From positions 248,001-312,000 of the IMG/VR virus record IMGVR_UViG_3300044957_000763: 64,000 bases of DNA, one strand, 5' to 3'. A program made the position numbers and the translations under genes. The notes under the pieces were generated by a model, which had not been told where the DNA came from, searched no databases, and saw only the letters and a program-made list of their open reading frames with translations. Positions 19,273 to 63,714 of the stretch are shown one piece after another; the first letter of the stretch is position 1, and the number at the start of each line of letters is the position of its first letter.

Positions 19273-19330
19273 TTAAAAATTCCTAATGTTACAAGTGGTT
19301 CACTACCAGTGGCACTAGGAGTTTTTAATG
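19273..19330 (+). promoter_or_regulatory. hairpin sequestering the SD and start of the downstream gene
   Basis: 19273-19292 pairs with 19309-19328 (one mismatch, three G-U pairs), covering AGGAG and the A of ATG. Confidence 0.55.
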
Positions 19331-20929
19331 GCAATTTCAACATATCGCAAGCGGTTTCCGCTTCCTGAAGTCAAGTATCTCAATGGTCTTGGCTTCAATC
19401 TTCATTGGGACAACGGTGGTTTGCCAGGAGAACTGGCCGCAATTCGCGCAACAGGCGCAAGATGGGTTAGAACCGACCTGCTTTGGAACGCTGTTGAATT
19501 CAATGGCTCTTACAACTTTTCTCGATGGGATAAGCACTTTGCAGGTCTAAAAGAAAACGGATTGCGCTCGGTTAATATTCTTTGTTACAATCACCCAGAC
19601 TACATGAGTCCAGAACAAAAATCGCAAATGGTAAACGCATGGGATACCAGTTTTGGTCTCTATGGTGACCAACAGATAGCCGGGTTCTTGGCCTACGTCG
19701 AAGCCACGGTCAAGCGATATGCCGGCCAAGGTCATATTTGGGAGTTTTGGAACGAACCCAATGTCGGTCATTTTTGGAAACCAGCAATTGACCCTGCACA
19801 ATTTATGCATGTCTTCTCACAAGTTGCTAAACTTATCAGAGATATTGCGCCAGATGAATATATTGCTATTGATGCTAGTCATATTAATGGTGATTCTCCA
19901 TCAGGTATGTTTCTGGAAAACTGCATAAAGCTCGGATTGCTAGACTTGATTGATGTGTGGTTCATACACCCGTACACTACCATTTGGAATACAGGTTCTG
20001 TATTGAACGCCGAGGCCGCAGGTGCCCAATATACATGGGCCAAGAAATTGATTGCAAAATACATACCAAAGGGCAGGTATATTCGCGTGTTTCAGGGTGA
20101 ATGTGGGATAACTGAAACGGACTGTGATTTTTACGAGCCGTCTCCATTTACTACCACAAACACAACATCCACCGGCGGCACAAAGACTGATTCTGCAACT
20201 GACTCTGCAGACGCCGCGGCTCTTCCGACACGAAGTGAAAACCTATTAGGAGAACTGTCGACCAACTTTAATAATCCGCTATGGAGAGGGTATTGGCTCA
20301 AGCCTAATATGGTTACCGGAGTTCTAGACCCGCTTGGCAAGAATAATGCTGTTCGTTTGCTTAGTGCTGATAGAGATGCCGACCCAGGCAGGAATGTGTC
20401 AGGATTGATTGCTGGCTCAAATACTATCGTAGGAAGCACGACCAACCCTCAATATTATGTTGTTAGTTATTACGCCAGAGCTACTAAGGACAATTTGTTT
20501 GTATTCTTTGGATTATCAGACAAATACATTGCATACCATCTTTTGGATGATAAATGGAGACGATATTACATCACTTTCAAGGTTACATCAAATGAAACTC
20601 GGGCATTTCAGGTGTATGAACGATTCCCCAACAATGTTGATTGGGAAATTGCTTATCCTATGGTTGAGAGAATTGACAATCCAGAACCCAACACACAAGA
20701 GAGAAGACAAGCACTTCAAGCAGAGTATGCGAAGAAACAATGGCAAGTTGCTCTTAAAAACGGAGTGGCAATGAACATATGGTACAATTGGATGGACGAC
20801 GGGTCAAACGCCCTGGGCTATTACGACAATTTTGGAGTTGTAGAAGAGGATAGGTTAACCAAAAAACCAGCGTATCATGCGTTACAACAAGCATACTTTG
20901 ATTGGCGAACCAACGGTATTCCTAAATAG
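19328..20929 (+). CDS. GH39/GH5-like glycoside hydrolase with an inserted beta-rich domain
   Basis: WVRTDLLW, WEFWNEPN, HPY, QGECG, C-terminal WYNWMDD...KKPAY. Confidence 0.75.
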   Translation: MAISTYRKRFPLPEVKYLNGLGFNLHWDNGGLPGELAAIRATGARWVRTDLLWNAVEFNGSYNFSRWDKHFAGLKENGLRSVNILCYNHPDYMSPEQKSQMVNAWDTSFGLYGDQQIAGFLAYVEATVKRYAGQGHIWEFWNEPNVGHFWKPAIDPAQFMHVFSQVAKLIRDIAPDEYIAIDASHINGDSPSGMFLENCIKLGLLDLIDVWFIHPYTTIWNTGSVLNAEAAGAQYTWAKKLIAKYIPKGRYIRVFQGECGITETDCDFYEPSPFTTTNTTSTGGTKTDSATDSADAAALPTRSENLLGELSTNFNNPLWRGYWLKPNMVTGVLDPLGKNNAVRLLSADRDADPGRNVSGLIAGSNTIVGSTTNPQYYVVSYYARATKDNLFVFFGLSDKYIAYHLLDDKWRRYYITFKVTSNETRAFQVYERFPNNVDWEIAYPMVERIDNPEPNTQERRQALQAEYAKKQWQVALKNGVAMNIWYNWMDDGSNALGYYDNFGVVEEDRLTKKPAYHALQQAYFDWRTNGIPK

Positions 20930-22331: not shown

Positions 22332-22459
22332 AATCCACCTCTTACTCCCATTATAACAAATTTCACCAAGGGGTTGACAAATCGCTCAAAAACATGCAAT
22401 CATACAAATCGTATTTCGTTTGTGGTATCATATCCACGTCGAAAGACATAGGAGAAACA

Positions 22460-24277
22460 ATGAATTCGAAGTTAACGCCTTTGGGCAAAATTACAATCTT
22501 GGTCGTTGTCACCACGGTTGCCTTCCTTGGATGGCGCATGTTTGGAGACAAGGTTAAATCAATGCTTGGTGGTGAAACAACCGCTTCGGTTGTGCCTAAG
22601 CAGGTCAATCTTCCTGCATTGACTGTATCGGCAGGTGAAGGCACCAACCTTCAACTCAACACGATTACAGAAACCCCATCTGCGAATGGTGGTACGTCTA
22701 TGCGTATGCTTTTGTGGGCATGGAATGCTCAGTCTGGTCTGATGCTTGCCAATGGTGGCGCAAAAACCACTCAGGGTTCGCTTATGGAACAGTTGGGAGT
22801 TAACTTACAGTTGACTCGCCAAGATGACCCGAGCAAGATGCAAGAAGCACTTATTGCATTCGCACAAGAACTCAAGAATGGCAATCCTCAGCCAAAATCT
22901 GGTGCGCACTATGTTGCCATCATGGGCGATGGTGCGGCCGCTTTCTTGAAGCCTGTCAATGACCAGTTGCGCAAACTCGGACCTGAATATACCGCCAAGG
23001 TTATCGGTTCAGCCGGTTATTCCCGTGGTGAAGATAAGTTCATGGGACCCGCAGAGTGGAAGAACAATCCAAATCTTGCAAAGGGCGGTGTTGTTGCTGG
23101 ATATCTGCGTGACGGAGACTGGAATATTGCTTTGAAGTGGCTTGGTGACAACAACATCAAGAACAACCCTGATGAGCGAACCTGGGACCCGGATGCACTG
23201 AACTGGGTTGCAGCCAATGACTACATTGACGCATCTGAAAAGTATATCGCCGGATACAACGAAGACCGCCCTGTGGTTCGCAACGGCAAGCGCACTGGTG
23301 AAACCAAGCGCATTACTGTTCAGGGTGTTGTAACGTGGACTCCCGGTGACGTTATTGTTGCCGAAAAGAAAGGTGGACTTGTTTCCATCGTGTCCACTCG
23401 AGAGTATTCCGCTCAGATGCCTAACACAATCATCGGCATCGACAAGTGGATGAAAGACAACCGAAAGGATGTCGAGAACATGTTGTCCGGTGTCTTTGCT
23501 GGCGGTGACGCTATTAAGTCGTCAGATGAGGCCTTGAAGAAGGCTTCGCAGATTAGCGCAAGCGTGTACAACGAGTCCGGTGCGGACGCCAATTACTGGT
23601 ATATGTACTTCAAGGGCACTACTAAGCGAGATGCAAAGGGTCTAATGGTTGAACTTGGTGGTTCGTCTGTCAACAACCTTGCAGACAATATGTTGCTGTA
23701 TGGCATGGTGCCTGGTTCTCAGAACCTGTTCGCCGCAACATACACAACTTTTGGAGATGTTGTTGTTCAGCAGTATCCCAACCTCGTGCCTTCGTATGAC
23801 CCAGTAAGTAGCATTCTTGATACTTCTTATATCAAGAATCTATCTGGTCGGTCTAACCAAACGTTGCGTAACGCTCAGATTGCCCAGGCTTCACCCAAGT
23901 ATGACCCGTCTGGCACAATTCAGCCAATTGGTTCAAAAAATAGCTGGCGGGCTTTCTTTGCTCCTGGTCAGACAGACATTCCTGCAAATGGTTCTAAGAC
24001 ACTGCGAACAATGTTGAATGACTTGTTGGTTGCTGGCAATGCCTATGTTGAAATTCATGGTCATGCTGACGGTGCCTCTGAGCGAGGTAAGTCTGATTCA
24101 TTGTCTGAGTCTCGTGCCTTCGCTATCAAGCGCTGGTTGGAAACACAGGCACCTGTGAACTTCCCGGCCGGTCGAATCCGTGTTGTATCGCACGGCAATT
24201 CGAATCCGTTGGAACCAAACACCGCTCGTGGTAGCGTTTGGAACCGACGTATCGAGGTTGTGATTGGCGTTCGATAA
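22460..24277 (+). CDS. ABC substrate-binding (NMT1/SsuA-like) protein with C-terminal OmpA domain
   Basis: SD AGGAGA; N-terminal TM helix; C-terminal IHGHAD..LSESRA...NRRIEV. Confidence 0.85.
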   Translation: MNSKLTPLGKITILVVVTTVAFLGWRMFGDKVKSMLGGETTASVVPKQVNLPALTVSAGEGTNLQLNTITETPSANGGTSMRMLLWAWNAQSGLMLANGGAKTTQGSLMEQLGVNLQLTRQDDPSKMQEALIAFAQELKNGNPQPKSGAHYVAIMGDGAAAFLKPVNDQLRKLGPEYTAKVIGSAGYSRGEDKFMGPAEWKNNPNLAKGGVVAGYLRDGDWNIALKWLGDNNIKNNPDERTWDPDALNWVAANDYIDASEKYIAGYNEDRPVVRNGKRTGETKRITVQGVVTWTPGDVIVAEKKGGLVSIVSTREYSAQMPNTIIGIDKWMKDNRKDVENMLSGVFAGGDAIKSSDEALKKASQISASVYNESGADANYWYMYFKGTTKRDAKGLMVELGGSSVNNLADNMLLYGMVPGSQNLFAATYTTFGDVVVQQYPNLVPSYDPVSSILDTSYIKNLSGRSNQTLRNAQIAQASPKYDPSGTIQPIGSKNSWRAFFAPGQTDIPANGSKTLRTMLNDLLVAGNAYVEIHGHADGASERGKSDSLSESRAFAIKRWLETQAPVNFPAGRIRVVSHGNSNPLEPNTARGSVWNRRIEVVIGVR

Positions 24278-32068: not shown

Positions 32069-32764
32069 ATGGCTGAATATGCTAACTTTCATGAATTCCG
32101 CAGATATATGAACCAAGCAGACGTTGTTGGACTTTGTGATGCGATTACATGTCACAAGAACAAAGAACAATTGTCTAAATGGTTACAGTCTCAAATGAAC
32201 AGGAGAGTTGCGTCTGATGCGGCGTCTATGCATGGTATGGCATTTTGTAGTTTTGAGCACACTTTACAGTGTCCAATGAGCTATTTATCGGATGAGGTTC
32301 TAAAGTGTGCCGGTGTTGCAATTGAAAGAATAATAACCCGCTTAATCGCACAGAAAGATGTAGACGCAACATCATATGGAGATGCATTTACATATCAATA
32401 CGAGAATGCATATGGTCTGCACAGTTATGATTCTGATTCTATTCGGGTTGGCAACGATGAAGTTTTGGTTTCAGTAAACAGTCCGGCACCAGATGATTTT
32501 ATTGAAGGATTCAAGAATTGTTTTGCTGTGAGACACAAGCAGCACCACTCATCGCTTTTATCAGTGGTGCCCAAAGATTGTTTTGCTATTGGATTGGCTA
32601 TTTTGGCAAAAAGCAGTAAGATGATTCAAATTCATGTTGGTGTTGCGTTGAAAAATCCGATGAATGTGCGTATAATTACAAACGAGGCTAAAAGTAGTCC
32701 ATTTGACAAAATGATGGCTGTTAACACCATTATTGACAAGGCAGGTTTTCATGAGCAAATATAG
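32069..32764 (+). CDS. hypothetical protein
   Basis: 231-aa ORF; TGG-TACACT 6 nt before ATG. Confidence 0.6.
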   Translation: MAEYANFHEFRRYMNQADVVGLCDAITCHKNKEQLSKWLQSQMNRRVASDAASMHGMAFCSFEHTLQCPMSYLSDEVLKCAGVAIERIITRLIAQKDVDATSYGDAFTYQYENAYGLHSYDSDSIRVGNDEVLVSVNSPAPDDFIEGFKNCFAVRHKQHHSSLLSVVPKDCFAIGLAILAKSSKMIQIHVGVALKNPMNVRIITNEAKSSPFDKMMAVNTIIDKAGFHEQI

Positions 32765-34772
32765 AGACCCAGAAGATACACGAGATAATCATATACCAGG
32801 ACTGCCAGATAGCATGGAACAACAGCGTGTTTCAGAAGACGTTATCAAGTCTAGAGTACGTGAAATCAACGAAGTTGGTGCAAAACTTAAAACTGAATTT
32901 GCTGGCATTGACAAGCAGATTGACACCATCATTCGCTATGTAACCCCTTTTTACGCGACGCCAGAATTGCTCACAAGACCCATAGTAGTGTGCCTGTGGG
33001 GCATGACTGGCGTAGGTAAGACACACGTTCTTCGTCGTTTGGCCAATTTAACCAACATGCAATCTCGATACGCCACATTCGATATGGGGGAATATTCTGG
33101 TGGATTCTCGGAATATACACTCAGGTATCAGCTTGACGATGTGGCAGACACTGTTGAAGACGGTAGGGCAATGATTGTGTTTGATGAAATGCAAACCATT
33201 AGGTTCATTGACGAAACAGGAAGCGAAGTCGACCGCCCGGCTGCAAGATTGATTTGGGACGTGCTGGATGGTGCACCGATGACTCGAAATACGTCTTTTA
33301 ACAATGATGTACTCGAGATGGTTAAAGACTTCAAGCGACTGCGACGACTCGGTGTAACTATTGAGAAGAACACGGTTGTATCTGGCACAAATCATTTCAA
33401 GAAAATCCGCCGACGATGGTCTAGAGAAGATTCAGAAGACACATTTACTGCTATAAATTCTGATGATTTTGAAACGATGTACAGGGCTAATCCTGTGCAC
33501 TTCAATTACAACGAAGACTATGAAGCATGGTTAAAGGTTTTTGAAGAATTCAAAGACATCAACGATTTCATTTCTTATATCCAGTTGGTTAGTGATGGGT
33601 ACAAACTTGGTGAACCAAACAACCTGTCTCGTAGTTTGATTTTCTGCGTTGGCAATCTTGATGAGGTATATCATGAAAGCCACGATATCAGCCCTGATAT
33701 TGACATTGAAAGCCTGCGAGAATACACTGAGAAAGTCACGCTTTCTCAGGTGAAAACCGCACTATTAGACAGATTCAGACCAGAACAGATTGCAAGACTT
33801 GGCAACAACCATGTTATCTATCCAAGCCTTGACAGAAATAGTTACTGGAAAATCATTAGAAAACACATAAGCAACTCGCTTGCCAGGGTCAAATCGGCAT
33901 ACAATGTTGACTTGAACGTGGACGAAAGCGTGGCTGAACTTATTTTCAAAGAGAGCGTATTTCCAACTCAGGGCGCAAGACCGGTAAATAACTCATTCAG
34001 CATGTTGTTTGACTCATATCTTGCCGATGCATTGTGCCAATTACCAGCCACTGGACCAATTGATTGGAAATATGATGCTACCAATCGAAAATACCAGTTC
34101 TCTCGTGGTGAAAGCACGTATTCGGTTGATGTTCAACTTATGGTTGAGTCGCAACGCGATAATGAAGAAAATGACAAGCAGGCAATTATAGCTGTTCACG
34201 AGGCAGGCCATGGACTCGCTGCCGCGCTCTATACTGGCAGATGGCCAAAGGAACTTCGCTCTCGCACTGCTGGAACAGAGGGCGGATATACGACGTTTGA
34301 ACCGCTTCAGTTCAAAACTCGCAATGACATTCTTGGAATAATTAAACAAGGCATGGCTGGCATTGTAGCTGAGGAAGTAATTTATGGAGTCGATAACATC
34401 AGCAATGGTTCCGGAGAAGACTTTTCGATGATTACTAAAGAAATCCAACAAGCAGTTGCCGCACTTGGGCTCTTCAGAGAGTCTTGGATTGGCACAAGCA
34501 ATTCACATGTTGGCCTTCTTTCAGATTCGCAAAGCATGAAGAAAGTGTCTCAAATCGTTATTGACTTGATTAAAGAATCACACAGCACGATGGTTGAGGA
34601 CTTTATTCAGCACAAAGAACTAATTTTGCGAATTGCAGAATACTTGATATCCCATACTGTCATGCCGGGGGTCATGTTTGCCGAGATGTGCGAAAAGCAC
34701 GGGGTGAAATTGCCAACTAGATTTAGTCACAGAGAATCACTACTGCAGTCATTAAAAGAAATCAATAGTTAA
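32751..34772 (+). CDS. soluble AAA+ ATPase fused to an M41 (FtsH-type) zinc protease domain
   Basis: GMTGVGKT, IVFDE, FRPEQIARLG, GARP; HEAGH, AEEV, GSGED; no TM segment. Confidence 0.85.
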   Translation: MSKYRDPEDTRDNHIPGLPDSMEQQRVSEDVIKSRVREINEVGAKLKTEFAGIDKQIDTIIRYVTPFYATPELLTRPIVVCLWGMTGVGKTHVLRRLANLTNMQSRYATFDMGEYSGGFSEYTLRYQLDDVADTVEDGRAMIVFDEMQTIRFIDETGSEVDRPAARLIWDVLDGAPMTRNTSFNNDVLEMVKDFKRLRRLGVTIEKNTVVSGTNHFKKIRRRWSREDSEDTFTAINSDDFETMYRANPVHFNYNEDYEAWLKVFEEFKDINDFISYIQLVSDGYKLGEPNNLSRSLIFCVGNLDEVYHESHDISPDIDIESLREYTEKVTLSQVKTALLDRFRPEQIARLGNNHVIYPSLDRNSYWKIIRKHISNSLARVKSAYNVDLNVDESVAELIFKESVFPTQGARPVNNSFSMLFDSYLADALCQLPATGPIDWKYDATNRKYQFSRGESTYSVDVQLMVESQRDNEENDKQAIIAVHEAGHGLAAALYTGRWPKELRSRTAGTEGGYTTFEPLQFKTRNDILGIIKQGMAGIVAEEVIYGVDNISNGSGEDFSMITKEIQQAVAALGLFRESWIGTSNSHVGLLSDSQSMKKVSQIVIDLIKESHSTMVEDFIQHKELILRIAEYLISHTVMPGVMFAEMCEKHGVKLPTRFSHRESLLQSLKEINS

Positions 34773-36673: not shown

Positions 36674-37931
36674 ACAAAAAAGGCAGGAATATGTAAATAG
36701 AATATATAAGTAATTCTATGTGCTGAAGGCTTTTAAGTACAGAATATATCCGAACCAGAAACAGGTTGAAATGTTCAACGAACATTTCGGAGCAACACGA
36801 TTCGTCTATAACTGGGGATTGGAAAAGAAAACGAAAGCCTATCAACAAGAGTCGAAGACTTTATCGTGTTTTGAGTTAACTAATCGACTGAAGCAACTCA
36901 AAGAAGAGCAGCCTTGGTTGAAGGCTGTGAATAGCCAATCACTCCAGATGGCATTGCGTCATTTAGACAGTGCTTACACTAGGTTCTTTCGAGAGAAGAA
37001 AGGATTTCCCAAGTTCAAATCAAAACACAATCCAAAACAATCATTTCAGTGTCCTCAGAATTCATCTGTTGACTGGAATAGTGAAACGCTCTCTATTCCG
37101 AAAATCAAGGGGATTAAAGCCAGGCTCCATCGAAAATTCGATGGAGAAATCAAAACTGTCACAATAAGCAAGAATTGTGTTGGACATTATTATGCATCAA
37201 TTCTTGTTGAGACAACAGAATTGATGCCGCAAAAGACGGTTCTGGACATTGACAATGCCGTAGGCATAGATGTTGGCATTAGTAGATTCCTAACCACTTC
37301 AGATGGAATGATTGTTGAGAATCGAAAGTTCTTCAAAAAGTCAGAGAAGAGACTGGCTTATGAACAGTATCGACTTAGTAAGATGAAGAAAGGCTCTGCT
37401 AACAGAACTAAACAAAAGAAAAGAATTGCCCGTATTCACGAGCATGTATCCAATCAAAGACGAGATTTTCTGCACAAAGTGACGAGAAAACTAGTTGACG
37501 AGAATCAAGCGACTACGTTTTGCATCGAAGACCTTTCAATTAAGAACATGCAGAAGAATCACTGTCTTGCCAAATCCATCGCAGACGCATCTTGGGGTAT
37601 GTTCTTTGAACTCCTGAAGTACAAATGTGATTGGTCAGGAAAGAATCTTCTTGATATCGGAAGATTTGAACCAAGTAGCAAGATGTGCAGTGCATGTGGT
37701 GCTGTAAACAGAGAACTAAAGCTATCTGATAGAACATGGACATGCGCCTGTGGCGCATGTCATGACAGAGATAAAAATGCCGCCGAGAACATTCGTAGAA
37801 TGGCTTTTCAGCGTCAGAACTTAATTAGATGTATAGGGCTGGAACAGCCCGAATCAACGCCTTTGGACACTGTAGCAATAGCTACGTGAATGAAAAAGGA
37901 AGTCGCACACTTTATGCGTGCGGCAGTTCAC
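36674..37931 (+). mobile_element. tnpB-only IS200/IS605-type element
   Basis: right end hairpin CGCAC..GTGCG then GGCAGTTCAC; left junction inferred from promoter restoration. Confidence 0.65.
36720..37889 (+). CDS. tnpB: TnpB RNA-guided endonuclease
   Basis: KAFKYRIYP, GIDVG, IEDL, SSKMCSACG, CACG..HDRDKNAA. Confidence 0.95.
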   Translation: MLKAFKYRIYPNQKQVEMFNEHFGATRFVYNWGLEKKTKAYQQESKTLSCFELTNRLKQLKEEQPWLKAVNSQSLQMALRHLDSAYTRFFREKKGFPKFKSKHNPKQSFQCPQNSSVDWNSETLSIPKIKGIKARLHRKFDGEIKTVTISKNCVGHYYASILVETTELMPQKTVLDIDNAVGIDVGISRFLTTSDGMIVENRKFFKKSEKRLAYEQYRLSKMKKGSANRTKQKKRIARIHEHVSNQRRDFLHKVTRKLVDENQATTFCIEDLSIKNMQKNHCLAKSIADASWGMFFELLKYKCDWSGKNLLDIGRFEPSSKMCSACGAVNRELKLSDRTWTCACGACHDRDKNAAENIRRMAFQRQNLIRCIGLEQPESTPLDTVAIAT

Positions 37932-46206: not shown

Positions 46207-46995
46207 TTGTGGTACAAGTGGCTTATTTGTACTAAGTGCGATAATCAAGTTATGCACGATGCACAAATACATGCAGGAAAAGTAGTCGCCGGCGCATTAC
46301 AATTGATGAAAACACTCACTGAACAAGGTGAGCGTAACACGCTTGAACTCAACAACGCTGCAGAAAAATACATGTTTGAGTACGACGTGTACCCATCGTG
46401 TAAAGGTTATGAGCCAAAGTGGAACTCATCCATGATTTATCAATATGGCACATGTATATCTGTGAATCATGAAATCGGCCACGGTCCACCAGCCGCAGAC
46501 AAAATGCTTGTTGACGGCGATGTGGTCAAATTCGATATAGTCGGAGCACATCAAGGATGGCACGTCGATGCCGCCATTACAGTCCCAGTAGGCAATATCT
46601 CTGACGAACGAGCAAGGCTCATAAAAATCACTAAGACCGCCTGCGCTATTGGTATTGAACAGGCTGTCCCAGGAAATACAGTTGGTCATATCACTCGCGC
46701 CATTGCCAAAGTCGCACTTGACAATAATCTTGGTATCGTTGTTGGGCTCAATGGCCACGGTATCGGACAAGCCATTCATGAATTACCAAACATACCAAAC
46801 ATTGGGACTGGCGGAAATGAGGTACTGAAAGAAGGTCAAACCATTTGTATCGAGCCAATGTTCACGCTTGGCTCTGGCGATAACAAGGTGCTAGAAGATG
46901 GGTGGACAATCGTTACCATTGATGGCAGTTGCGCGGCTCACTGCGAACATACCGTGTGTGTTCAAGAAAAACCATTGATTTTAACCGTGAAGTAA
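46207..46995 (+). CDS. map: type I methionine aminopeptidase
   Basis: CISVN...HG, D..D, GHGIG..HE, IEPM, HCEHT; exact start uncertain. Confidence 0.92.
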   Translation: MWYKWLICTKCDNQVMHDAQIHAGKVVAGALQLMKTLTEQGERNTLELNNAAEKYMFEYDVYPSCKGYEPKWNSSMIYQYGTCISVNHEIGHGPPAADKMLVDGDVVKFDIVGAHQGWHVDAAITVPVGNISDERARLIKITKTACAIGIEQAVPGNTVGHITRAIAKVALDNNLGIVVGLNGHGIGQAIHELPNIPNIGTGGNEVLKEGQTICIEPMFTLGSGDNKVLEDGWTIVTIDGSCAAHCEHTVCVQEKPLILTVK

Positions 46996-50361: not shown

Positions 50362-50907
50362 ATGAGCCTTTACAACATGATGAACGGGTACAACGAGCAC
50401 GCTGGTTTGTTATGCCATATTCTGGGACTTAAGGTCAGAGAAGACATGGAAGGAACTCCAGTGGGTAGATTTCGTGACATCAGTCTCAACGCAGACGGAA
50501 CCGAAATCTACCTTCTAACCAGGAATGGTGGTGGTAATCGTGAGTGCTGGAACAATACAGAAGATTCAACATCAGGAAATTGTCTTTGTCCTGGTTGTAT
50601 TCAGACCCAATTGTTGCCACAACATGAAAACTACATCAACGACCGTGACGACGACTTTGATTGCACTTTCGCAATCACTATTTTCAGTGTTCCAAAAGAG
50701 TATTTGGAACTCACTAAGTCGCTGGCCACTGGCGAAGAACCGATGACGCTTGAGCAGAAGACCATGGCTTCAATTGAGCGCATTAAGAACATGTCGTCTA
50801 AAGAACTACGCGCAGACCCTGGCATTGGCGGATTGATGAATCAACTTGAGGAAGCACTGCAACAATCAGGTGCGATTGCCATGCTGGACGCTGACATTCA
50901 GCAATGA
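50362..50907 (+). CDS. conserved phage hypothetical protein
   Basis: GRFRD, TRNGGGNRE, DDDFDCT; leaderless promoter. Confidence 0.65.
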   Translation: MSLYNMMNGYNEHAGLLCHILGLKVREDMEGTPVGRFRDISLNADGTEIYLLTRNGGGNRECWNNTEDSTSGNCLCPGCIQTQLLPQHENYINDRDDDFDCTFAITIFSVPKEYLELTKSLATGEEPMTLEQKTMASIERIKNMSSKELRADPGIGGLMNQLEEALQQSGAIAMLDADIQQ

Positions 50908-52052
50908 GCAAACTTCCAAAGAACAAGACTACTGTGTGGTTGACTAACTACTCAGCAGGAACCATTGAAGAGAAAATATTAGTCAAGAGAAAGTCTGGAG
51001 TATATAGCATTCAGCATACAGATATTATCTTAGACCACACACTCACACCAAGCATCGAGCAATCTATTGCAGAACAAAACACTGACGAACATGTATACTC
51101 ATGGGGTGTAAAATTAAACACCACGCTGTCTATTGCGTCTAGTCTTGACTGGGCATTGTGGTGTTTAGAATCTGAAAAGTCAAATAATGAAAAGCGGCTT
51201 GAAACGATAAATCAAATCCTGCAAACCTATAACATTGGGGACTCGTCATTATTGCACAATATGCAACCATTTGTGCATGCACAACTTGTGCGACTGAATA
51301 GCGATGACACTAGTGGTTTTGTAGAGGTGTATTACAAGTCAAATTGGAGCAGCGCTATGCATCAATCAATGGGGCGCAATGCTAACTTGTTGTTGCACCA
51401 GGGTCTTGGTGTGAAAGAAGGCCGACTAAGCCAAGAAAACATGTATGTGCGAATCGGTCGGTATGGTGTTGGGTTCTACATTACTGATGATTTGTTTAAC
51501 GAACTTGTTCACGAATCGCAAAGTTTAATTGACCAAGCAGAAACAGTAAAACAATTACAGGCAATGTGGGGCAATCACCAATATGGATTCAGTATTGAAT
51601 TCCAACAGAGTCCGCCGCACCCATATATGGCATACAAGAATCACTGGTGTCATTTTGAAGAGGGCGATTATGAACGAGCGCAAAAAATAATTTCAAAACA
51701 ATTGCCTACGGCTTTGTCGGTTGCAGCACGGTCTAACTTAAAAACAAAATCCAAAGCCCCGGTTGTGCAATTCGCACTGTCTCGTTCCGCAGCCGAACGC
51801 GAAGGTGTGAATAGTGAAACTGATGGACATTGTTTGATTGAATACTCCGCAAAGGCCGATTTGCGCAAAAACACATACTATGGAATGAGTAAACCACTAA
51901 CAGGATTGTGCTTTGGGCGCACAGATGGCACTGTTAGCTTGTATATTCAAGGAGACCCAAATCACGTGCACAAGTTGACCGCAGAGGCTTATAGACAATT
52001 GATGCGCAAATCTACTAGCGTTCTTGACGCACTTATTGAGGCAGACCAATGA
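50904..52052 (+). CDS. hypothetical protein with TSVLDALI tail
   Basis: 382-aa ORF. Confidence 0.7.
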   Translation: MSKLPKNKTTVWLTNYSAGTIEEKILVKRKSGVYSIQHTDIILDHTLTPSIEQSIAEQNTDEHVYSWGVKLNTTLSIASSLDWALWCLESEKSNNEKRLETINQILQTYNIGDSSLLHNMQPFVHAQLVRLNSDDTSGFVEVYYKSNWSSAMHQSMGRNANLLLHQGLGVKEGRLSQENMYVRIGRYGVGFYITDDLFNELVHESQSLIDQAETVKQLQAMWGNHQYGFSIEFQQSPPHPYMAYKNHWCHFEEGDYERAQKIISKQLPTALSVAARSNLKTKSKAPVVQFALSRSAAEREGVNSETDGHCLIEYSAKADLRKNTYYGMSKPLTGLCFGRTDGTVSLYIQGDPNHVHKLTAEAYRQLMRKSTSVLDALIEADQ

Positions 52053-58394: not shown

Positions 58395-58625
58395 TTGTGT
58401 GGTAGCTTAAGGTTTCAATGTAGCAGCATGGCGCCAGATTCGTGCGTTATCTGCGCACAGTGCCATATGGTTTGGGAGATTAACGACAATGGTGAACTTG
58501 AAACCTGCCAATACCAATTTGACAACCAGCGCAAACAAGAAATTATTGACTCACTAGATGGTGTCAATTGTGCTTATGCGCCTAAGAAAAAATTACTGTC
58601 GATACTTGACATGATGCTAGAATAA
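58395..58625 (+). CDS. small Cys-rich protein with LSILDMML tail
   Basis: 76-aa ORF. Confidence 0.55.
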   Translation: MCGSLRFQCSSMAPDSCVICAQCHMVWEINDNGELETCQYQFDNQRKQEIIDSLDGVNCAYAPKKKLLSILDMMLE

Positions 58626-58694: not shown

Positions 58695-59402
58695 ATGAAT
58701 CTGCTCGGTTTATATCGGTCTCTTAAATCTGGGGGCAAGATTTCTAAGCGCGACGAACATTGGTTGATAGAAACCAATGGCGAAACTGTAAATGTCGACA
58801 GTTCTGTTGTCCAAAAAGCCATCGAACTAAACATGGTGCGCGAAAAACAAGACGGGCAAATCGTATTAAATGATAACATTGTGATAACATCGAATCAAGT
58901 TGATGTTAGCTATCTATATGACAAAGTACGACTGGCCGCAGTTATCAAAAGCCAGTTGATGAACAATGAATTTGATGAAGTGATTGAAGATTGTGTCCAT
59001 AGAGTCACAACCATACTCGATTGTCCTATCTCAATTATGACAATCATAGATGGCGAAGTTCAGTTCTTAAAAAGTAGTTACGGATTGACAGACTCCATCG
59101 AAGTCGCAAAAATTACACCACTGTCTGAAACCTTCTGCCAATTCACAGTCGCAAACAAAGGCGAATTTGTCGTTGAGAATTCACTAGAACATCCATTACT
59201 CAAGGACATTAATACACCAGGAATCCTGGCTTACATGGGGCACCCAATCAAATCTGACGGAGAAGTAGTCGGAACACTTTGCGCAATGGATAGACAGCCC
59301 CGCAAATGGACAGCACACGAACTAGCCACATTGAAAATTATTGCAAACATGGTCAATCTACACATCCAAGGAGTTCAAATTGACTGGCTTTCTGTTTTGT
59401 AA
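58695..59402 (+). CDS. stand-alone GAF-domain protein
   Basis: TFCQFTV, AYMGHPI, VGTLCAMDRQPRKW. Confidence 0.85.
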   Translation: MNLLGLYRSLKSGGKISKRDEHWLIETNGETVNVDSSVVQKAIELNMVREKQDGQIVLNDNIVITSNQVDVSYLYDKVRLAAVIKSQLMNNEFDEVIEDCVHRVTTILDCPISIMTIIDGEVQFLKSSYGLTDSIEVAKITPLSETFCQFTVANKGEFVVENSLEHPLLKDINTPGILAYMGHPIKSDGEVVGTLCAMDRQPRKWTAHELATLKIIANMVNLHIQGVQIDWLSVL

Positions 59403-59420: not shown

Positions 59421-59837
59421 GTGTTTACATTCAAGTTCAAAGTAAACGAAGACAGGTCTGTGAAAATTTACGGACTTGAAACAGGAGCAGTGAAAGAACT
59501 CGCCGGCGCAGGACAAACATGGCGCATGTGGTCAGTGTCAGGACATGGCTATCAATCCGGCCGAGAATGGAAATATGGCCAGAGTAGCATCTGGATTGTT
59601 CAAGTGGATGGCGACAATATGCTTGCTGACATTGGGTTTGAACTCGGTCACAAATGGAAGGCTGGTCGCAAAATCATCGCACAAATCGTTGAACAACTCA
59701 ACCAAAACCCCGGAGCCAACCACCTGCCATATTTGATAGAACTGTCGAAAAAAGTCCGTGACTGGCATTGCGAACAACAAGAACTAACACCAATCCAAAG
59801 ACTGGAAAAAGCCATAAAAACAATCAAAAATGAATAA
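59421..59837 (+). CDS. hypothetical protein
   Basis: TGC-TATACT 6 nt before GTG. Confidence 0.65.
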   Translation: MFTFKFKVNEDRSVKIYGLETGAVKELAGAGQTWRMWSVSGHGYQSGREWKYGQSSIWIVQVDGDNMLADIGFELGHKWKAGRKIIAQIVEQLNQNPGANHLPYLIELSKKVRDWHCEQQELTPIQRLEKAIKTIKNE

Positions 59838-60093
59838 ATTGATATGCCACTGCAAATGCTATCTATTCTTTAGTGTCGAAGATGGAACAATTGTGGTGTG
59901 TAACAAATGTTTTTCACAATGGAAATGGCATGTCGGACAAAGACTTGTAGAAGTGCATTCAAGCGAAACAGATAGACTTTTTCTATCTGAAAAAAGACCA
60001 CCAACAACAACGCTCAAAGAGTATTACGCCAAAGACATCCAACCACTATCGGCGCAAAAAACATCGCTGCTTGACACGCTCTTCATGCTATAA
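59830..60093 (+). CDS. small Cys protein with TSLLDTLF tail
   Basis: 87-aa ORF. Confidence 0.6.
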   Translation: MNKLICHCKCYLFFSVEDGTIVVCNKCFSQWKWHVGQRLVEVHSSETDRLFLSEKRPPTTTLKEYYAKDIQPLSAQKTSLLDTLFML

Positions 60094-60324: not shown

Positions 60325-60621
60325 ATGAACAATAGATTCAATCAAACAGTGACGAACACACAACTTGAAACCTCAAAATCACTCATTAACATAATCGCAG
60401 AATTAGACTTATTAGTGCCAGTCGACGGAACGTGCATCGAGTGCGCAACAGGCAAGTATAGATTCCAATTCCATATGTCTGTAGTGGAAAAGTACGCAGG
60501 ACAAATTAGAGAACTTATGAGCGAATCACCGTGCTACTGCGGCGGCTACCTGTGGCTGGTGAGTATACCACCAAAACCCAACAAACTCGACAATATGATT
60601 GAGGAAAAAACACCATGTTAG
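60325..60621 (+). CDS. small Cys protein with PNKLDNMI tail
   Basis: 98-aa ORF. Confidence 0.55.
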   Translation: MNNRFNQTVTNTQLETSKSLINIIAELDLLVPVDGTCIECATGKYRFQFHMSVVEKYAGQIRELMSESPCYCGGYLWLVSIPPKPNKLDNMIEEKTPC

Positions 60622-60848
60622 ACAATCAGTGGAAACCAATAACAACAGCACCTAAAGACGGCAGCAGAATACTAGGAACCTCAAATAGCACACAAGTACA
60701 CTGCTACTATTTCCATCAAACAGATAAACAATGGTGGATTGATTACGCAGATGGACCAAGCTGGCAACCAACACACTGGATGAATGTGCCCGAATACTGC
60801 GAAACACCAAAAATCAGCTTGCTCGATGCAATATTCATGGTGGAATAA
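60615..60848 (+). CDS. DUF551-like small protein with SLLDAIF tail
   Basis: WKPITTAPKDG...PTHWM. Confidence 0.7.
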   Translation: MLDNQWKPITTAPKDGSRILGTSNSTQVHCYYFHQTDKQWWIDYADGPSWQPTHWMNVPEYCETPKISLLDAIFMVE

Positions 60849-60850
60849 CG

Positions 60851-61299
60851 TTGAGAACTACAGAAAAAACAATTATGTATGACGCATATCACGCATACCA
60901 ATATGCACTGGATGTAATCAAAGACCGATGGCTGGAGGCCGAACCTATCATAATGAAGGATGCTGAATACGCATACTTATACGCAAAAGAAGTAATCAAA
61001 GGACGATGGCCGGTAGCAGAACCAACTATCCAGCAGGATGCTGAATTTGCATACTACTACGCACAGAGAATCATCAAAGGACGCTTTCTGGCAGCCGAAC
61101 AAACCATCCTGCAGAATGCTGAATACATGCAACAATACACTGACCATTTCTTCCCATACACAAAAGTTGTCACAAAGAGAAAAATTAATGATGATTGGCT
61201 ATGGGAAAAAAGCGGCGCAATAGGATGCTTTGCACCAGAAGAATGTTCAAAATTAAAATCAGCATTCTAGATGCTATACTAGAAACAGAAGTATGTTGA
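60851..61299 (+). pseudogene. 26-aa-repeat protein, unit 1 (3 repeats), frameshifted near 61243
   Basis: one A missing relative to unit 2; correction restores ...ISILDAILETEVC*. Confidence 0.75.
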
Positions 61300-62048
61300 C
61301 AATTACAAAAGACACTACACCAAAAGAAGCATACTTATACGCAAAAGACGTCATCAAAGGACGTTGGCCGGAGGCCGAATCAATCATCCAGCAGGATGTA
61401 AAATACACATACTTATATGCACGATACCTAATCCCAGGACGTTGGCTGGAAGCCGAACCTATTATCCTGCAGGATGCTGAATATGCATGCTTGTACGCAG
61501 AATACGTCATCAAAGGTCGTTGGCCGGAGGCCGAACCAACCATCCTGCAGGATGCTGAAGAAGCATTCTACTACGCACGTAACGTCATCAAAGGACGTTG
61601 GCCAGAGGCCGAACAAACTATTCAGCAGAATGCATATTACGCATACTGCTACGCACGAGACGTAATCAAAGGTCGCTGGCCGGAGGCCGAACCAATCATC
61701 CAGCAGGATGCACAATACGCATACGAATACGCACGAGACGTAATCAAAGGTCGCTGGCCGGAGGTCGAACCTATTATCCTGCAGGATGCTGAATATGCAT
61801 GCTTGTACGCAGAATACGTAATCCAAGACCGTTGGCCGGAGGCCGAACCAACCATCCTGCAGAATGCTGAATACATGCGTCAATACATCGCCCATTTCTT
61901 CCCATACACAAAAGTTGTTACAAAAGAACAAATTAATGATGATTGGCTATGGAAAAAAAGCGGCGCAATAGGATGCTTCGCACCAGAAGAAATGTTCAAA
62001 ACAAAAACCAGCCTGCTAGATGCTATACTAGAAACAGAAGTATGTTGA
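61293..62048 (+). CDS. 26-aa-repeat protein, unit 2 (7 repeats)
   Basis: YAxxYAxxVIKGRWPEAEPxIxQDA repeats. Confidence 0.85.
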   Translation: MLTITKDTTPKEAYLYAKDVIKGRWPEAESIIQQDVKYTYLYARYLIPGRWLEAEPIILQDAEYACLYAEYVIKGRWPEAEPTILQDAEEAFYYARNVIKGRWPEAEQTIQQNAYYAYCYARDVIKGRWPEAEPIIQQDAQYAYEYARDVIKGRWPEVEPIILQDAEYACLYAEYVIQDRWPEAEPTILQNAEYMRQYIAHFFPYTKVVTKEQINDDWLWKKSGAIGCFAPEEMFKTKTSLLDAILETEVC

Positions 62049-62485
62049 CAATTACAAAAGACACTACACCAGAAGAAGCATACGCACACGCACTTAACGT
62101 AATCCAAGACCGCTGGCCGGAGGCCGAACCAATCATCCAACAAAACAGGGAGTATGCATACTACTACGCAAACGGCGTCATCAAAGGACGTTGGCCGGAA
62201 GCCGAACCAACTATCATGCAGAATTCAAAATACGCATTGTGTTACGCAACAGACGTAATCCAAGACCGTTGGCCGGAGGCCGAAGCAACCATCCAACAGG
62301 ATGCATATTATGCGCGGCACTACACTGAACATTTCTTCCCAGGAATAAAAGTTGTTACAAAACAACAAATTAACAATAATTGGTTATGGGAGAAAAATGG
62401 CGCAATAGGATTTTTTGCACCAAAAGAACTCTTCAAACCAACAACCAGCATTCTAGATACTATACTAGAAACAGAAGTATGTTGA
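62042..62485 (+). CDS. 26-aa-repeat protein, unit 3 (3 repeats)
   Basis: real start ATG 62042, overlapping the previous stop (ATGTTGA). Confidence 0.85.
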   Translation: MLTITKDTTPEEAYAHALNVIQDRWPEAEPIIQQNREYAYYYANGVIKGRWPEAEPTIMQNSKYALCYATDVIQDRWPEAEATIQQDAYYARHYTEHFFPGIKVVTKQQINNNWLWEKNGAIGFFAPKELFKPTTSILDTILETEVC

Positions 62486-63714
62486 CAATTACAGAAAACA
62501 CCACACCAAAAGAAGCATACTGCTACGCACGAGACGTCATCAAAGGACGCTGGCCAGAGGCCGAATACATCATCCAGCAGGATGTACAACACGCATACTT
62601 CTACGCACTTAACGTCATCAAAGGACGCTTTCTGGAAGCCGAACCAACTATCCAGCAGAATGCACAATACGCATACGAATACGCACGAGACGTAATCAAA
62701 GGCCGCTGGGAAGAAGCTGAACCAGCCATCCAGCAGTGTAACGAGTGTGCATGCGCCTACGCACACGATGTAATCCAAGCCCGCTTCTTAGCGGCCGAAC
62801 CAACTATTCAACAGTCTGCATATTACGCATACGAATACGCAAAAGACGTAATCAAAGACCGCTGGCCAGAAGCAGAACCAGCCATTCTGAAAAGTGCAAA
62901 ATATGCATACTTATACGCATATGAAATCCTTGAAAACCGCTGGCCGGAGGCCGAATCAATCATCCAGCAGGATGCTGAATATGCATGTTGTTACGCACGC
63001 AACCTAATCGAAGACCGATGGTTAGAAGCCGAACCAACCATCCAGCAGGATGCAAAAGAAGCATACTTATACGCATTTAACATCATCAAAAACCGTTGGC
63101 CGGAGGCCGAATCAACCATCCAGCAGGATGCAAAATACGCATGCTTATACGCAGAATACCTAATCCAAGACCGTTGGCCGGAGGCCGAACCTATCATCCA
63201 GCAGAATGCAAAATGCGCATACAAATATGCACTGAACGTAATCCAAGACCGATGGCCGGAGGCCGAACCAATCATCCAACAAAACAGGGAGTATGCATAC
63301 TACTACGCAAACGACGTCATCAAAGGACGTTGGCCGGAGGCCGAACACATCATTCAGCAGAATTCAAAATACGCATACTACTATGCACGAGACGTAATAC
63401 AAGACCGATGGCTGGAGGCCGAACCGACCATCCGAAAGAATGCATTTTACGCATACTGCTACGCACGAGACGTAATCAAAGACCGCTTCCTAGCAGCCGA
63501 ACTAACTATCCAGCAGAGCGCCGAATACACGCAACAATACACTGACTGCTTCTTCTCAGGAACAAAAGTTGTTACAAAACAACAAATTAACGATGATTGG
63601 CTATGGGAGAAAAAGGGCGCAATAGGATTTTTTGCACCAGAAGAAATGTTCAAAACAAAAACCAGCATTCTAGATGCTATACTCCAAGAAAGTCCGCAAT
63701 GGGCCAACATATAA
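62479..63714 (+). CDS. 26-aa-repeat protein, unit 4 (13 repeats)
   Basis: real start ATG 62479 with the same overlap. Confidence 0.85.
   Translation: MLTITENTTPKEAYCYARDVIKGRWPEAEYIIQQDVQHAYFYALNVIKGRFLEAEPTIQQNAQYAYEYARDVIKGRWEEAEPAIQQCNECACAYAHDVIQARFLAAEPTIQQSAYYAYEYAKDVIKDRWPEAEPAILKSAKYAYLYAYEILENRWPEAESIIQQDAEYACCYARNLIEDRWLEAEPTIQQDAKEAYLYAFNIIKNRWPEAESTIQQDAKYACLYAEYLIQDRWPEAEPIIQQNAKCAYKYALNVIQDRWPEAEPIIQQNREYAYYYANDVIKGRWPEAEHIIQQNSKYAYYYARDVIQDRWLEAEPTIRKNAFYAYCYARDVIKDRFLAAELTIQQSAEYTQQYTDCFFSGTKVVTKQQINDDWLWEKKGAIGFFAPEEMFKTKTSILDAILQESPQWANI

What the first reader, a model, noticed from the sequence alone, without database searches (positions are those of the whole stretch)
60851..63714. 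Tandem family of modular 26-aa-repeat proteins with hypervariable positions and translational coupling
Seen: four genes with 3, 7, 3 and 13 repeats of YAxxYA-XX-VIKGRWPEAEPxIxQDA. The scaffold is nearly fixed while the di-residue before V/L-I varies (KD, RY, EY, RN, RD, LN, NG, TD, HD, YE, FN, ND), as does the residue in AYxYA. Near-identical repeat blocks recur between genes (unit 3 repeats 1-2 versus unit 4 repeats 10-11). Each unit ends in a shared ~45-aa cap with the LD tail and, except unit 4, overlaps the next start as ATGTTGA. Inference: a recombination-shuffled alpha-solenoid binder repertoire, conceptually TALE/PPR-like, with cap and tail targeting it to a common partner.
Basis: partly seen in the sequence, partly recalled or inferred. 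Interest (0 to 1): 0.72.

Follow-up and report, generated by a model that had tools for sequence, protein, structure and literature searches.

The report
Phage repeat proteins sharing the polymerase's tail
Four neighbouring genes of a 479-kb lake-water phage encode acidic helical-repeat proteins from a large, unnamed phage family, and their short C-terminal tail also ends the phage's own DNA polymerase and about a dozen unrelated small proteins, so it is probably a docking peptide for the phage's sliding clamp.

Summary
Four tandem + strand genes carry 3, 7, 3 and 13 copies of a 26-aa (78-nt) repeat. Repeat positions 3, 6 and 7 are the most variable. One detail is wrong: unit 1 has a 1-nt deletion, so its LD tail and ATGTTGA overlap are out of frame.

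AlphaFold2 gives a confident alpha-solenoid (pLDDT 95) with a small cap and a floppy tail helix. The repeat belongs to a large, unnamed family (>2000 metagenomic proteins, nearly all viral). Related phages hold one such gene at the syntenic site, or at least 18 in tandem, so copy number is fluid.

The proteins are acidic (pI 4.7-5.4), and the variable positions evolve about neutrally (pN/pS 1.0 against 0.41 elsewhere). No reverse transcriptase is encoded. A TALE/PPR-like nucleic-acid code is therefore unlikely.

The tail S-[LIVM]-[LI]-D-x-hydrophobic is a strictly C-terminal peptide motif: 17 of 28 six-frame hits lie within 12 residues of a stop (P about 2e-8). It also ends the phage's DnaE-type polymerase and that polymerase's orthologues. 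The phage encodes its own beta clamp.

Best reading: diversified binder proteins tethered to the clamp or replisome by a clamp-binding-type tail. Binding itself is untested; the one complex prediction gave no answer.

The parts
60851..61270 (+). Unit 1: 3 repeats (60893-61126) plus the cap. Start is TTG 60851 or ATG 60875. A 1-nt deletion near 61243 truncates it, so it has no in-frame tail.
61255..61299 (+). Remnant of the unit 1 tail (KISILDAILETEVC, then stop) in the +1 frame. It still overlaps the unit 2 ATG as ATGTTGA (61293-61299).
61293..62048 (+). Unit 2 (251 aa): short N-terminal leader, 7 repeats (61329-61874), cap (about 61866-62003), tail KTSLLDAILETEVC (62004-62045).
62042..62485 (+). 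Unit 3 (147 aa): 3 repeats (62078-62311), cap, tail TTSILDTILETEVC (62441-62482). Its start overlaps the unit 2 stop as ATGTTGA (62042-62048).
62479..63714 (+). Unit 4 (411 aa): 13 repeats (62515-63528), cap, long tail variant KTSILDAILQESPQWANI (63658-63711). Its start overlaps the unit 3 stop as ATGTTGA (62479-62485).
60615..60848 (+). Unrelated 77-aa protein with the same tail (KISLLDAIFMVE). Its homologue in the relative L012 also has the tail and also lies just upstream of the repeat gene.
59830..60093 (+). Unrelated 87-aa Cys-rich protein with the tail (KTSLLDTLFML).
58395..58625 (+). Unrelated 76-aa Cys-rich protein with the tail (LLSILDMMLE).
50904..52052 (+). Unrelated 382-aa protein with the tail (STSVLDALIEADQ). 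Its only orthologue (57% identity) keeps the tail.

Best explanation
The four genes are a local tandem expansion of a large, uncharacterised phage family of acidic alpha-solenoid proteins.

Each 26-aa repeat folds as a 12-residue helix, a turn and a 7-residue helix. The conserved A/Y/A/V/I/R/W/E residues pack the stack. Positions 25, 3, 6 and 7 form a freely varying exposed face on helix A, which is most simply a protein-binding surface that differs from paralogue to paralogue.

The solenoid ends in a small alpha/beta cap. After it comes a flexible C-terminal peptide, K-x-S-[LIV]-[LI]-D-x-hydrophobic-hydrophobic-(E). That peptide is a portable docking motif. In this genome it also ends the DnaE-type replicative polymerase and about a dozen unrelated small proteins.

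It resembles the hydrophobic-acidic C-terminal clamp-binding tails that T4 gp43, gp55 and gp33 share. It also fits the bacterial QL[SD]LF motif at L2, D3 and the hydrophobic position 5. The most likely partner is therefore the phage's own DnaN-type sliding clamp, or failing that another replisome hub. On this reading the solenoids are clamp-tethered adaptors that hold different bound partners at replicating phage DNA.

The genes appear to be co-expressed through 7-nt stop/start overlaps. Unit 1 has lost its tether through a frameshift.

Shown here: the gene and repeat anatomy, the predicted fold, the family's size, the copy-number changes between relatives, the tail's strict C-terminal placement, its conservation at the peptide level, and its presence on the polymerase.

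Inferred: that the variable face binds proteins, that the tail binds the clamp, and that the overlaps give translational coupling.
For: Anatomy and fold.
- Gene and repeat anatomy.
- AF2 model of u2: pLDDT 95.0, all five models at least 93.9. Repeats are helix-turn-helix; tail residues 241-249 form a helix whose pLDDT falls from 70 to 53.
- Variable positions fall within a 100-degree arc of helix A.
- Scaffold positions are under purifying selection (pN/pS 0.41).

Family and copy number.
- 2036 homologues at E<=0.001. ESM Atlas clusters are 94-100% viral.
- The same positions are the most variable in 711 repeats from 120 homologues.
- L012 is syntenic (flanking proteins 42-86% identical) and has one gene with 4 repeats.
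- L011 has at least 18 tandem paralogues with 2-11 repeats, the same cap and tail, and ATGA overlaps.

The tail as a peptide motif.
- The strict 7-residue motif occurs 12 times in six frames of 479 kb, and 10 of those lie 1-9 codons before a stop.
- S[LIVM][LI]Dx[FILMVW] lies within 12 residues of the stop in 17 of 28 hits, against an expected share of 0.143 (binomial 1.9e-8). In 96 kb of unrelated phage loci it is 0 of 2.
- Codons for S, L and D differ synonymously among unrelated carriers, so the conservation is at the peptide level.
- S and D are invariant in the alignment of 22 cap-plus-tail sequences.

Link to the replisome.
- The 1109-aa DnaE-type polymerase has PHP, NTPase, finger and HHH_6 domains, with no OB or tau-binding domain. 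It ends in KPSILDSFE after a basic linker, and it has no QxxLF-type motif anywhere else.
- Its orthologues at 41-93% identity keep S[IV]LD-x-[FA] at the very end while the linker drifts.
- The phage encodes a beta clamp (PF02767 46.5 bits, PF00712 28.6 bits).

Literature.
- T4 gp43, gp55 and gp33 share interchangeable hydrophobic-acidic C-terminal clamp-binding tails on divergent linkers (PMC2988020, read).
- Clamp-binding motifs have a loose QL(D/S)LF consensus and sit in flexible termini (PMC6511837, read).
Against: - No binding evidence. The single complex prediction (clamp dimer plus u3) scored 0.00, which the tool labels 'no answer' and not evidence either way.
- The motif lacks the Q of the bacterial consensus. 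Its alignment to QL[SD]LF and to the T4 tails is my own and was not scored.
- In E. coli the extreme C-terminus of DnaE also contacts the clamp-loader tau subunit (from memory). The polymerase tail could therefore point to a different replisome partner.
- The polymerase is the only carrier with a known function. All other carriers are ORFans.
- It is unclear why a phage would tether many acidic solenoids to a clamp.
- Nothing shows what the variable face binds. pN/pS of about 1 fits mere lack of constraint as well as diversification.
- The variable-face test is weak (609 of 10000 shuffles reach the observed value). I had no model coordinates to check exposure directly.
Confidence: 0.5

Rival explanations
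1. The tail is a docking peptide or degron for a hub other than the clamp. One candidate is a clamp-loader or other replisome subunit. Another is the soluble FtsH-like AAA+/M41 protease encoded in the same window (32733-34772). The protease would then either clear these proteins on a schedule or receive targets that the solenoids bring to it.
For: - The window encodes a 679-aa protein with Peptidase_M41 (50.6 bits), a Walker A motif at residue 90, HEAGH at 489 and no hydrophobic segment.
- FtsH-type proteases are known to take substrates by non-polar terminal tails (from memory).
- The tail is predicted to be flexible.
- In E. coli the DnaE C-terminus also touches tau (from memory).
- The clamp-complex prediction gave no support.
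Against: - A sequence-specific tail with invariant S and D, conserved on the replicative polymerase across 41-93% identity, fits a docking site better than a generic degron. Tagging the polymerase for degradation would be odd.
- No clamp-loader gene was looked for.
Confidence: 0.22
2. The solenoids are virion-packaged proteins, ejected into the host at infection, and the tail is the signal that loads them into the capsid.
For: Many family members carry the repeats on an N-terminal domain of about 240 aa. Its homologue in Pseudomonas phage PA5oct (EST35_0205) is annotated as a structural protein found by mass spectrometry, and it lies next to a gene I read as terminase-like from its sequence (not tested).
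Against: - That link concerns the N-domain, which these four genes lack.
- The tail is shared with the replicative polymerase, which does not fit a capsid-loading signal.
- There are no proteomic data for this phage.
Confidence: 0.07
3. One reading: TALE/PPR/PUF-like modular readers in which each repeat's variable residues specify one base of DNA or RNA.
For: - Regular repeats with two or three variable positions per unit on one helix face.
- A Pumilio structure appears among weak fold matches, at TM 0.37 and E 0.31.
Against: - All units are acidic: pI 4.7-5.4, net charge -3 to -20. So are 17 paralogues in L011.
- The repeat is 26 aa, not 33-36.
- The variable residues lie within helix A, not in a loop.
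- pN/pS is about 1.
- No fold match exceeds the noise level for helical repeats: best VIA Z is 6.9 and best Foldseek E is 0.029.
Confidence: 0.05
4. The array is decaying or functionless repetitive DNA whose open frames persist by chance.
For: - Unit 1 is frameshifted.
- Long antisense ORFs also run through the repeats, for example 61428-61931 and 62320-62778 on the - strand.
Against: - Scaffold positions are under purifying selection (pN/pS 0.41) although synonymous divergence between repeats is about 0.45.
- Architecture, cap and tail are conserved in relatives at 40-58% identity.
- The fold prediction is confident.
Confidence: 0.03

Closest known systems
C-terminal sliding-clamp-binding tails of T4 gp43, gp55 and gp33 (PMC2988020)
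   Same: A short hydrophobic-acidic peptide at the extreme C-terminus, on a divergent flexible linker, is shared by the replicative polymerase and by unrelated accessory proteins of one phage. As I recall it, the T4 tail has an S-L-D core (that recollection was not confirmed: 'SLDFL' is absent from the review read); the core here is S-[LIV]-L-D.
   Different: The clamp here is a DnaN-type beta clamp, not gp45. The polymerase is DnaE-type, not family B. There are at least 16 carriers, most of them ORFans, including an expandable repeat-protein family. Binding was not shown.
Bacterial beta-clamp-binding motif QL[SD]LF (PMC6511837)
   Same: A loose five- or six-residue motif in flexible termini. 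L2, D3 and the hydrophobic position 5 match, and the motif sits on the polymerase after its HhH domain.
   Different: Q1 is replaced by an aliphatic residue preceded by an invariant Ser. A second hydrophobic residue and an acidic residue usually follow. Membership is inconclusive.
Poxvirus ankyrin-repeat/PRANC (F-box-like) multigene families
   Same: A concept only: tandemly expanded viral paralogues that join a variable repeat-domain binder to a conserved C-terminal module docking on one common cellular machine.
   Different: Different fold, different host domain and a different partner (SCF ubiquitin ligase). There is no sequence relation. This comparison is from memory and was not tested.
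HEAT/TPR/alphaRep-type alpha-solenoids and designed helical repeat proteins
   Same: Stacked helix-turn-helix repeats. These are the best, though weak, structural matches.
   Different: The unit is 26 aa, against 34-42 aa. No significant sequence or fold match was found: TM below 0.4, VIA Z at most 6.9, inside the noise range the tool states for helical repeats.
Pfam Phage_FRD3 (T4 Frd.3), DUF982, HTH_35 and DUF4116
   Same: Weak hits fall on one repeat-length stretch. T4 Frd.3 resembles a single repeat over 25 residues. DUF4116 proteins appear among weak structural matches.
   Different: The hits are 17-27-aa partial matches summed over repeats, and no single stretch passes. DUF4116 gives no sequence hit at E<=1. 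No existing family describes this repeat.

Membership tests
TALE repeats | Repeats of 33-35 aa with the specificity di-residue in the inter-helix loop | tested here: not met
   The unit is 26 aa. By AF2 secondary structure, variable positions 3, 6 and 7 lie inside helix A.
TALE / PPR / PUF nucleic-acid readers | A basic, nucleic-acid-binding surface | tested here: not met
   pI 4.7-5.4 and net charge -3 to -20 for u1-u4. The L011 paralogues have pI 4.4-6.7.
Alpha-solenoid (HEAT/TPR-like) fold class | Stacked antiparallel helix pairs that repeat regularly | tested here: met
   AF2 model of u2: pLDDT 95.0, seven regular helix-turn-helix units. The best structural matches are helical-repeat proteins.
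Pfam HEAT/TPR families | A domain-level match to the family model | tested here: not met
   TPR_7 scores 28.3 bits for whole u2, but no single stretch passes. There is no HEAT hit.
Pfam Phage_FRD3 (PF05798) | A match across the 75-position model above its cut-off | tested here: not met
   At most 28.2 bits summed, covering only profile positions 10-46, with no qualifying stretch in three of the four units. BLASTP against T4 Frd.3 aligns about 25 residues.
DUF4116 repeat (PF13475) | A sequence match to the model | tested here: not met
   No hit at E<=1. Only weak structural neighbours, at E 0.08-2.7.
Beta-clamp-binding motif (CBM) | A short motif in a flexible terminal region | tested here: met
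   17 of 28 motif hits lie within 12 residues of a stop. Tail pLDDT falls from 70 to 53.
Beta-clamp-binding motif (CBM) | Fits the QL[SD]LF consensus | tested here: inconclusive
   L2, D3 and the hydrophobic position 5 fit, but Q1 is absent (consensus from PMC6511837).
Beta-clamp-binding motif (CBM) | Carried by the replicative polymerase of a genome that encodes the clamp | tested here: met
   The DnaE-type polymerase ends in PSILDSFE, conserved in orthologues. DnaN is present.
Beta-clamp-binding motif (CBM) | The peptide binds the hydrophobic cleft of the clamp | tested here: inconclusive
   Complex prediction with the clamp dimer plus u3 scored 0.00, 'no answer'. Biochemistry is needed.
Diversity-generating retroelement target | A reverse transcriptase and template repeat in the genome | tested here: not met
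   No PF00078 match in the 479-kb genome. The variable codons show no single-base bias.

The most novel reading that the evidence does not exclude
This clade of jumbo phages uses its own sliding clamp as a tool-belt for far more than replication. At least 16 proteins carry the polymerase's clamp-binding tail. Among them is an expandable, diversifying array of solenoid binders (1, 4 or at least 18 genes in different relatives). These would capture different host or defence proteins and hold them on replicating phage DNA: a repertoire of adaptors plugged into one DNA-bound hub.
Probability: 0.3. Interest if true: 0.8.

Novelty: new variant of a known kind. Interest (0 to 1): 0.62.

Why it matters
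First, it defines a very large phage repeat family with more than 2000 proteins. The unit is 26 aa, which is unusually short for a helical repeat. The family has no Pfam or NCBIfam model, and two motif searches of the literature found nothing. It repeatedly forms tandem multigene arrays in jumbo phages.

Second, it points to a lineage-specific C-terminal peptide shared by the replicative polymerase and many ORFans. If that peptide binds the clamp, it assigns a cellular address, the replisome or DNA-loaded clamps, to more than a dozen proteins of unknown function. It would also extend the T4 idea of a clamp used as an activator or tool-belt to DnaN-encoding jumbo phages.

The motif is simple enough to test with peptides and one purified protein.

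Tried and rejected
- **Pfam, NCBIfam, PHROGs, PADLOC and PDB sequence searches on the four proteins.** These gave only partial, repeat-length hits (Phage_FRD3, DUF982, TPR_7, IBN_N; HTH_35 in homologues), judged spurious.
- **T4 Frd.3 as a relative.** It resembles only one repeat.
- **The tail as a DNA-level signal (promoter or RBS).** I noticed TGCTATACT and GGTGAT inside the tail codons. I rejected them as the cause of conservation because unrelated carriers on both strands use different synonymous codons and have different downstream contexts. The promoter scan was at chance level.
- **DGR-type hypermutation.** No reverse transcriptase is encoded.
- **Read-level heterogeneity.** Only assembled contigs were available. 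They break inside the repeats, and every piece that maps is identical or nearly so, so heterogeneity could be neither shown nor excluded.
- **Complex prediction with the clamp.** No answer.
- **GenBank phages.** No match for u2, for the cap or for the 382-aa carrier, although the low-complexity filter may hide repeats.
- **IMG/VR.** Searches found only cap-less subfamilies. A co-occurrence test of tail against clamp across genomes was therefore not possible.
- **Fold searches (PDB, BFVD, AFDB clusters, VIA).** Nothing rose above the noise for helical repeats.
- **Pfam on 15 other tail carriers.** Nothing passes a curated cut-off, so there is no functional clue.
- **Literature.** The strings GRWPEAE and WPEAE gave no relevant paper, and the jumbo-phage comparative review does not mention the family.
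Full report
**Source and context.** The window is bases 248001-312000 of a 478,840-bp IMG/VR virus record with direct terminal repeats. Its GC content is 44.5%. Near-identical sequence occurs in several lake-water metagenome runs. It is an uncultured jumbo phage. No GenBank phage matches the locus.

**The observation.** Four + strand ORFs lie head to tail:
- u1: 60851 (TTG; first ATG 60875) to 61270
- u2: 61293-62048
- u3: 62042-62485
- u4: 62479-63714

Tandem Repeats Finder reports 78-nt arrays, with higher-order periods of 156, 234 and 437 nt. Anchoring on the R-[WF]-x-x-[AV]-E core gives 3, 7, 3 and 13 in-register 26-aa repeats. A5, R12, E17 and I20 are invariant. Entropy peaks at position 6 (2.85 bits), position 3 (2.62) and position 7 (2.06). 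Median nucleotide identity between repeats is 73%. A few pairs reach 88-92%, including u3 repeats 1-2 against u4 repeats 10-11 (141/156 nt). u2/u3 and u3/u4 overlap as ATGTTGA.

One correction is needed. u1 lacks one A near 61243 compared with the other units. It therefore terminates at TAG 61268-61270. Its tail and its ATGTTGA overlap with u2 survive only in the +1 frame, at 61255-61299. Contigs from three runs span the site with no differences there.

**Selection.** By a per-codon Nei-Gojobori count over all repeat pairs, positions 3, 6 and 7 have pN/pS 1.02 and the other 23 positions have 0.41. Synonymous divergence is about 0.45. The scaffold is therefore under purifying selection and the repeats are mostly old. 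The variable sites evolve about neutrally: they are unconstrained or mildly diversifying, not demonstrably hypermutated. The genome has no reverse transcriptase, so a diversity-generating retroelement is excluded.

**Fold.** I aligned 26 proteins of the same architecture and predicted u2 with AlphaFold2.
- The model has pLDDT 95.0 and pTM 0.85, and all five models score at least 93.9.
- Each repeat forms a 12-residue helix A (repeat positions 24-26 and 1-9), a four-residue turn (K-G-R-W) and a 7-residue helix B (positions 14-20).
- After the last repeat comes a cap of about 45 aa: one helix, then two short strands separated by short helices.
- Residues 241-249 form a detached helix whose confidence falls from 70 to 53.
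- u3 gave the same picture, but only one of its five models was confident, because that alignment was shallow.

On a helical wheel, positions 25, 3, 6 and 7 fall between 180 and 280 degrees. The conserved A/Y/A/V/I residues lie opposite them. The entropy moment is 0.40, reached by 609 of 10000 shuffles. This is suggestive rather than strong. I had no model coordinates to check exposure directly.

Foldseek against PDB, BFVD and AFDB clusters, and VIA-align, return only generic helical-repeat proteins. Best TM is below 0.4 against PDB and best VIA Z is 6.9, which is below the noise level the tool states for repeats. Beyond those, there are a few uncharacterised homologues.

**Family.** u2 finds 2036 proteins at E<=0.001 in the large protein collection. 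ESM Atlas clusters are 94-100% viral. No Pfam, NCBIfam or PADLOC model describes the repeat. Hits to Phage_FRD3, DUF982, HTH_35, TPR_7 and IBN_N are 17-27-aa partial matches summed over repeats. T4 Frd.3 resembles a single repeat only. The same positions (3, 25, 26, 6, 19, 7) are the most variable across 711 repeats from 120 homologues.

Most family members join the repeats to other modules. One common form has an N-terminal domain of about 240 aa. In a 250-kb IMG/VR contig this form makes its own tandem array of at least six genes with differing repeat numbers. The PA5oct homologue of that N-domain is annotated as a virion protein found by mass spectrometry.

**The cap-plus-tail subfamily is rare and its copy number is fluid.** An exhaustive phmmer search with the 60-aa cap and tail against 1.84 billion representatives finds four real clusters beyond this genome's own.
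- Contig L012 is syntenic with the window. Flanking proteins are 42-86% identical. It carries one repeat gene with 4 repeats where this phage has four genes with 26.
- Contig L011 (9,984 bp) consists almost wholly of this family. It has 18 complete genes and two more cut by the contig ends. Each has 2-11 repeats, and 16 of the 18 complete genes end in the tail; most neighbouring genes overlap as ATGA.
- One loose contig end in a lake-water run shows a variant in which the u4-type tail runs on into a further overlapped start.

That condition is not met.

**Charge.** u1-u4 have pI 4.7-5.4 and net charge -3 to -20. The L011 paralogues have pI 4.4-6.7. Together with the 26-aa unit and the in-helix variable sites, this argues against a TALE/PPR/PUF-like nucleic-acid code. 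It favours protein binding, or possibly DNA mimicry.

**The tail is the most informative part.**
- The 7-residue motif [STLC][LIV]LD[ATMS][ILMV][ILVFM] occurs 12 times in all six frames of the genome. Ten of these lie 1-9 codons before a stop.
- The shorter form S[LIVM][LI]Dx[FILMVW] occurs 28 times in ORFs of at least 60 aa. Seventeen lie within 12 residues of the stop, against an expected share of 0.143 (binomial 1.9e-8). In 96 kb of unrelated phage loci the count is 0 of 2.
- Carriers lie on both strands across the genome. They include Cys-rich mini-proteins, the 77-aa protein just upstream of the array and a 382-aa protein.
- A run of five consecutive ORFs at 371-374.4 kb also ends in related tails; three of them fit the S-type motif.
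- Unrelated carriers use different codons for the conserved S, L and D. The conserved object is therefore the peptide, not a promoter or ribosome-binding site buried in the codons.
- The orthologue of the 382-aa carrier (57% identity) keeps the tail.
- In relatives the motif is again almost exclusively C-terminal: 4 of 4 hits in L012 and 15 of 16 in L011.
- S and D are invariant in the cap-plus-tail alignment.

**Link to the replisome.**
- The only carrier with a recognisable function is the phage's DnaE-type DNA polymerase III alpha subunit (genome 415632-418961, 1109 aa). It has PHP, NTPase, finger and HHH_6 domains, and no OB or tau-binding domain.
- It ends in a basic low-complexity linker followed by K-P-S-I-L-D-S-F-E. 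It has no QxxLF-type motif anywhere else.
- Its orthologues at 41-93% identity keep S-[IV]-L-D-x-[FA] at the very end while the linker drifts. A more distant one ends in a T4/RB69-like acidic-aromatic tail.
- The genome encodes its own DnaN-type clamp (PF02767 46.5 bits, PF00712 28.6 bits). An ECF-like sigma factor gene lies immediately upstream of it. No gp45-type clamp is present.
[quoted passage not shown] These are interchangeable clamp-binding epitopes on divergent flexible linkers (PMC2988020).
- Bacterial clamp-binding motifs have a loose QL(D/S)LF consensus and sit in flexible termini (PMC6511837). The tail here fits L2, D3 and the hydrophobic position 5.

I therefore read the tail as a clamp-binding-type docking peptide. 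This is an inference.

**Alternatives for the partner.** The candidates are:
- another replisome subunit;
- the soluble FtsH-like AAA+/M41 protease at window 32733-34772;
- a capsid-loading route, hinted at only by the PA5oct link of the unrelated N-domain.

**Verdict.** The anatomy is real and well beyond chance. The nucleic-acid-code analogy is not. The family is undescribed but belongs to a known kind, viral multigene repeat-protein families. The shared polymerase-type tail is the part most worth an experiment.

Noticed in passing
window 32733-34772 (+): A soluble FtsH-like protease of 679 aa: Peptidase_M41 at 50.6 bits, Walker A GMTGVGKT at residue 90, HEAGH at 489, no transmembrane segment. 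This is unusual for a phage, and it is a candidate alternative partner for the tails.
   Followed up: partly
G000:C1:415632-418961 (locus L033), outside the window: A DnaE-type Pol III alpha subunit that lacks the OB and tau-binding domains and ends in the same S-I-L-D-x-F tail as the repeat proteins. The tail is conserved in orthologues P0128-P0133.
   Followed up: yes
L009:767-1435 and L009:1498-2649 (genome about 431976-433858): An ECF-like sigma factor gene (Sigma70_r2, 36 bits) lies directly upstream of the phage's DnaN clamp gene. The pairing recalls the T4 link between clamp and late sigma. The sigma protein itself has no tail.
   Followed up: partly
L029 (genome 370000-375500): Five consecutive + strand ORFs of 131-236 aa end in tail-like peptides: ASMLDELL, RVLDSLL, RSILDEIL, GMLDDVL and GSMLDGII. 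None has a Pfam match.
   Followed up: partly
L011 (ENA contig, 9,984 bp): 18 complete tandem paralogues of the cap-plus-tail solenoid family, plus two cut by the contig ends. They have 2-11 repeats each and most neighbours overlap as ATGA. The tail codons ATGGTGATAGAATGA contain a GGTGAT Shine-Dalgarno-like string for the next gene.
   Followed up: partly
L010:2643-10620 (IMGVR_UViG_3300033120_001080): A separate tandem array of at least six genes with the same 26-aa repeats, most fused to a conserved N-domain of about 240 aa that contains a G-T-K-W-C-T motif. The PA5oct homologue of that N-domain (EST35_0205) is a virion protein by mass spectrometry. Salicola phage SCTP-2 gp435 has the N-domain plus two repeats.
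   Followed up: partly
window 61428-61931 (-), 62320-62778 (-), 62991-63275 (-): Long antisense ORFs run through the repeat arrays. They are most likely by-products of the repeated codon pattern, not genes.
   Followed up: no
window 63675, run X2: One contig end diverges after the u4 tail. It continues as a short tail ending in GTGTGTTGA, like an internal unit junction. This suggests a co-occurring relative with a further unit after its u4-like gene.
   Followed up: no
window 15822-17501 (-); 46207-46995 (+); 58695-59402 (+): Auxiliary genes typical of very large phages: an arginyl-tRNA synthetase (tRNA-synt_1d plus DALR_1), an M24 metallopeptidase and a GAF-domain protein.
   Followed up: no
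window 6360-7538 (-) and 36720-37889 (+); 4904-6241 (-): Two transposase-like genes (phrog_506, the second at 422 bits) and an HNH/homing-endonuclease-like gene, so mobile elements sit inside the phage genome.
   Followed up: no
window 19328-20929 (+); 22394-24277 (+): A protein with a weak Glyco_hydro_39 match (27.3 bits) and a 627-aa protein with a C-terminal OmpA-family domain (49 bits).
   Followed up: no
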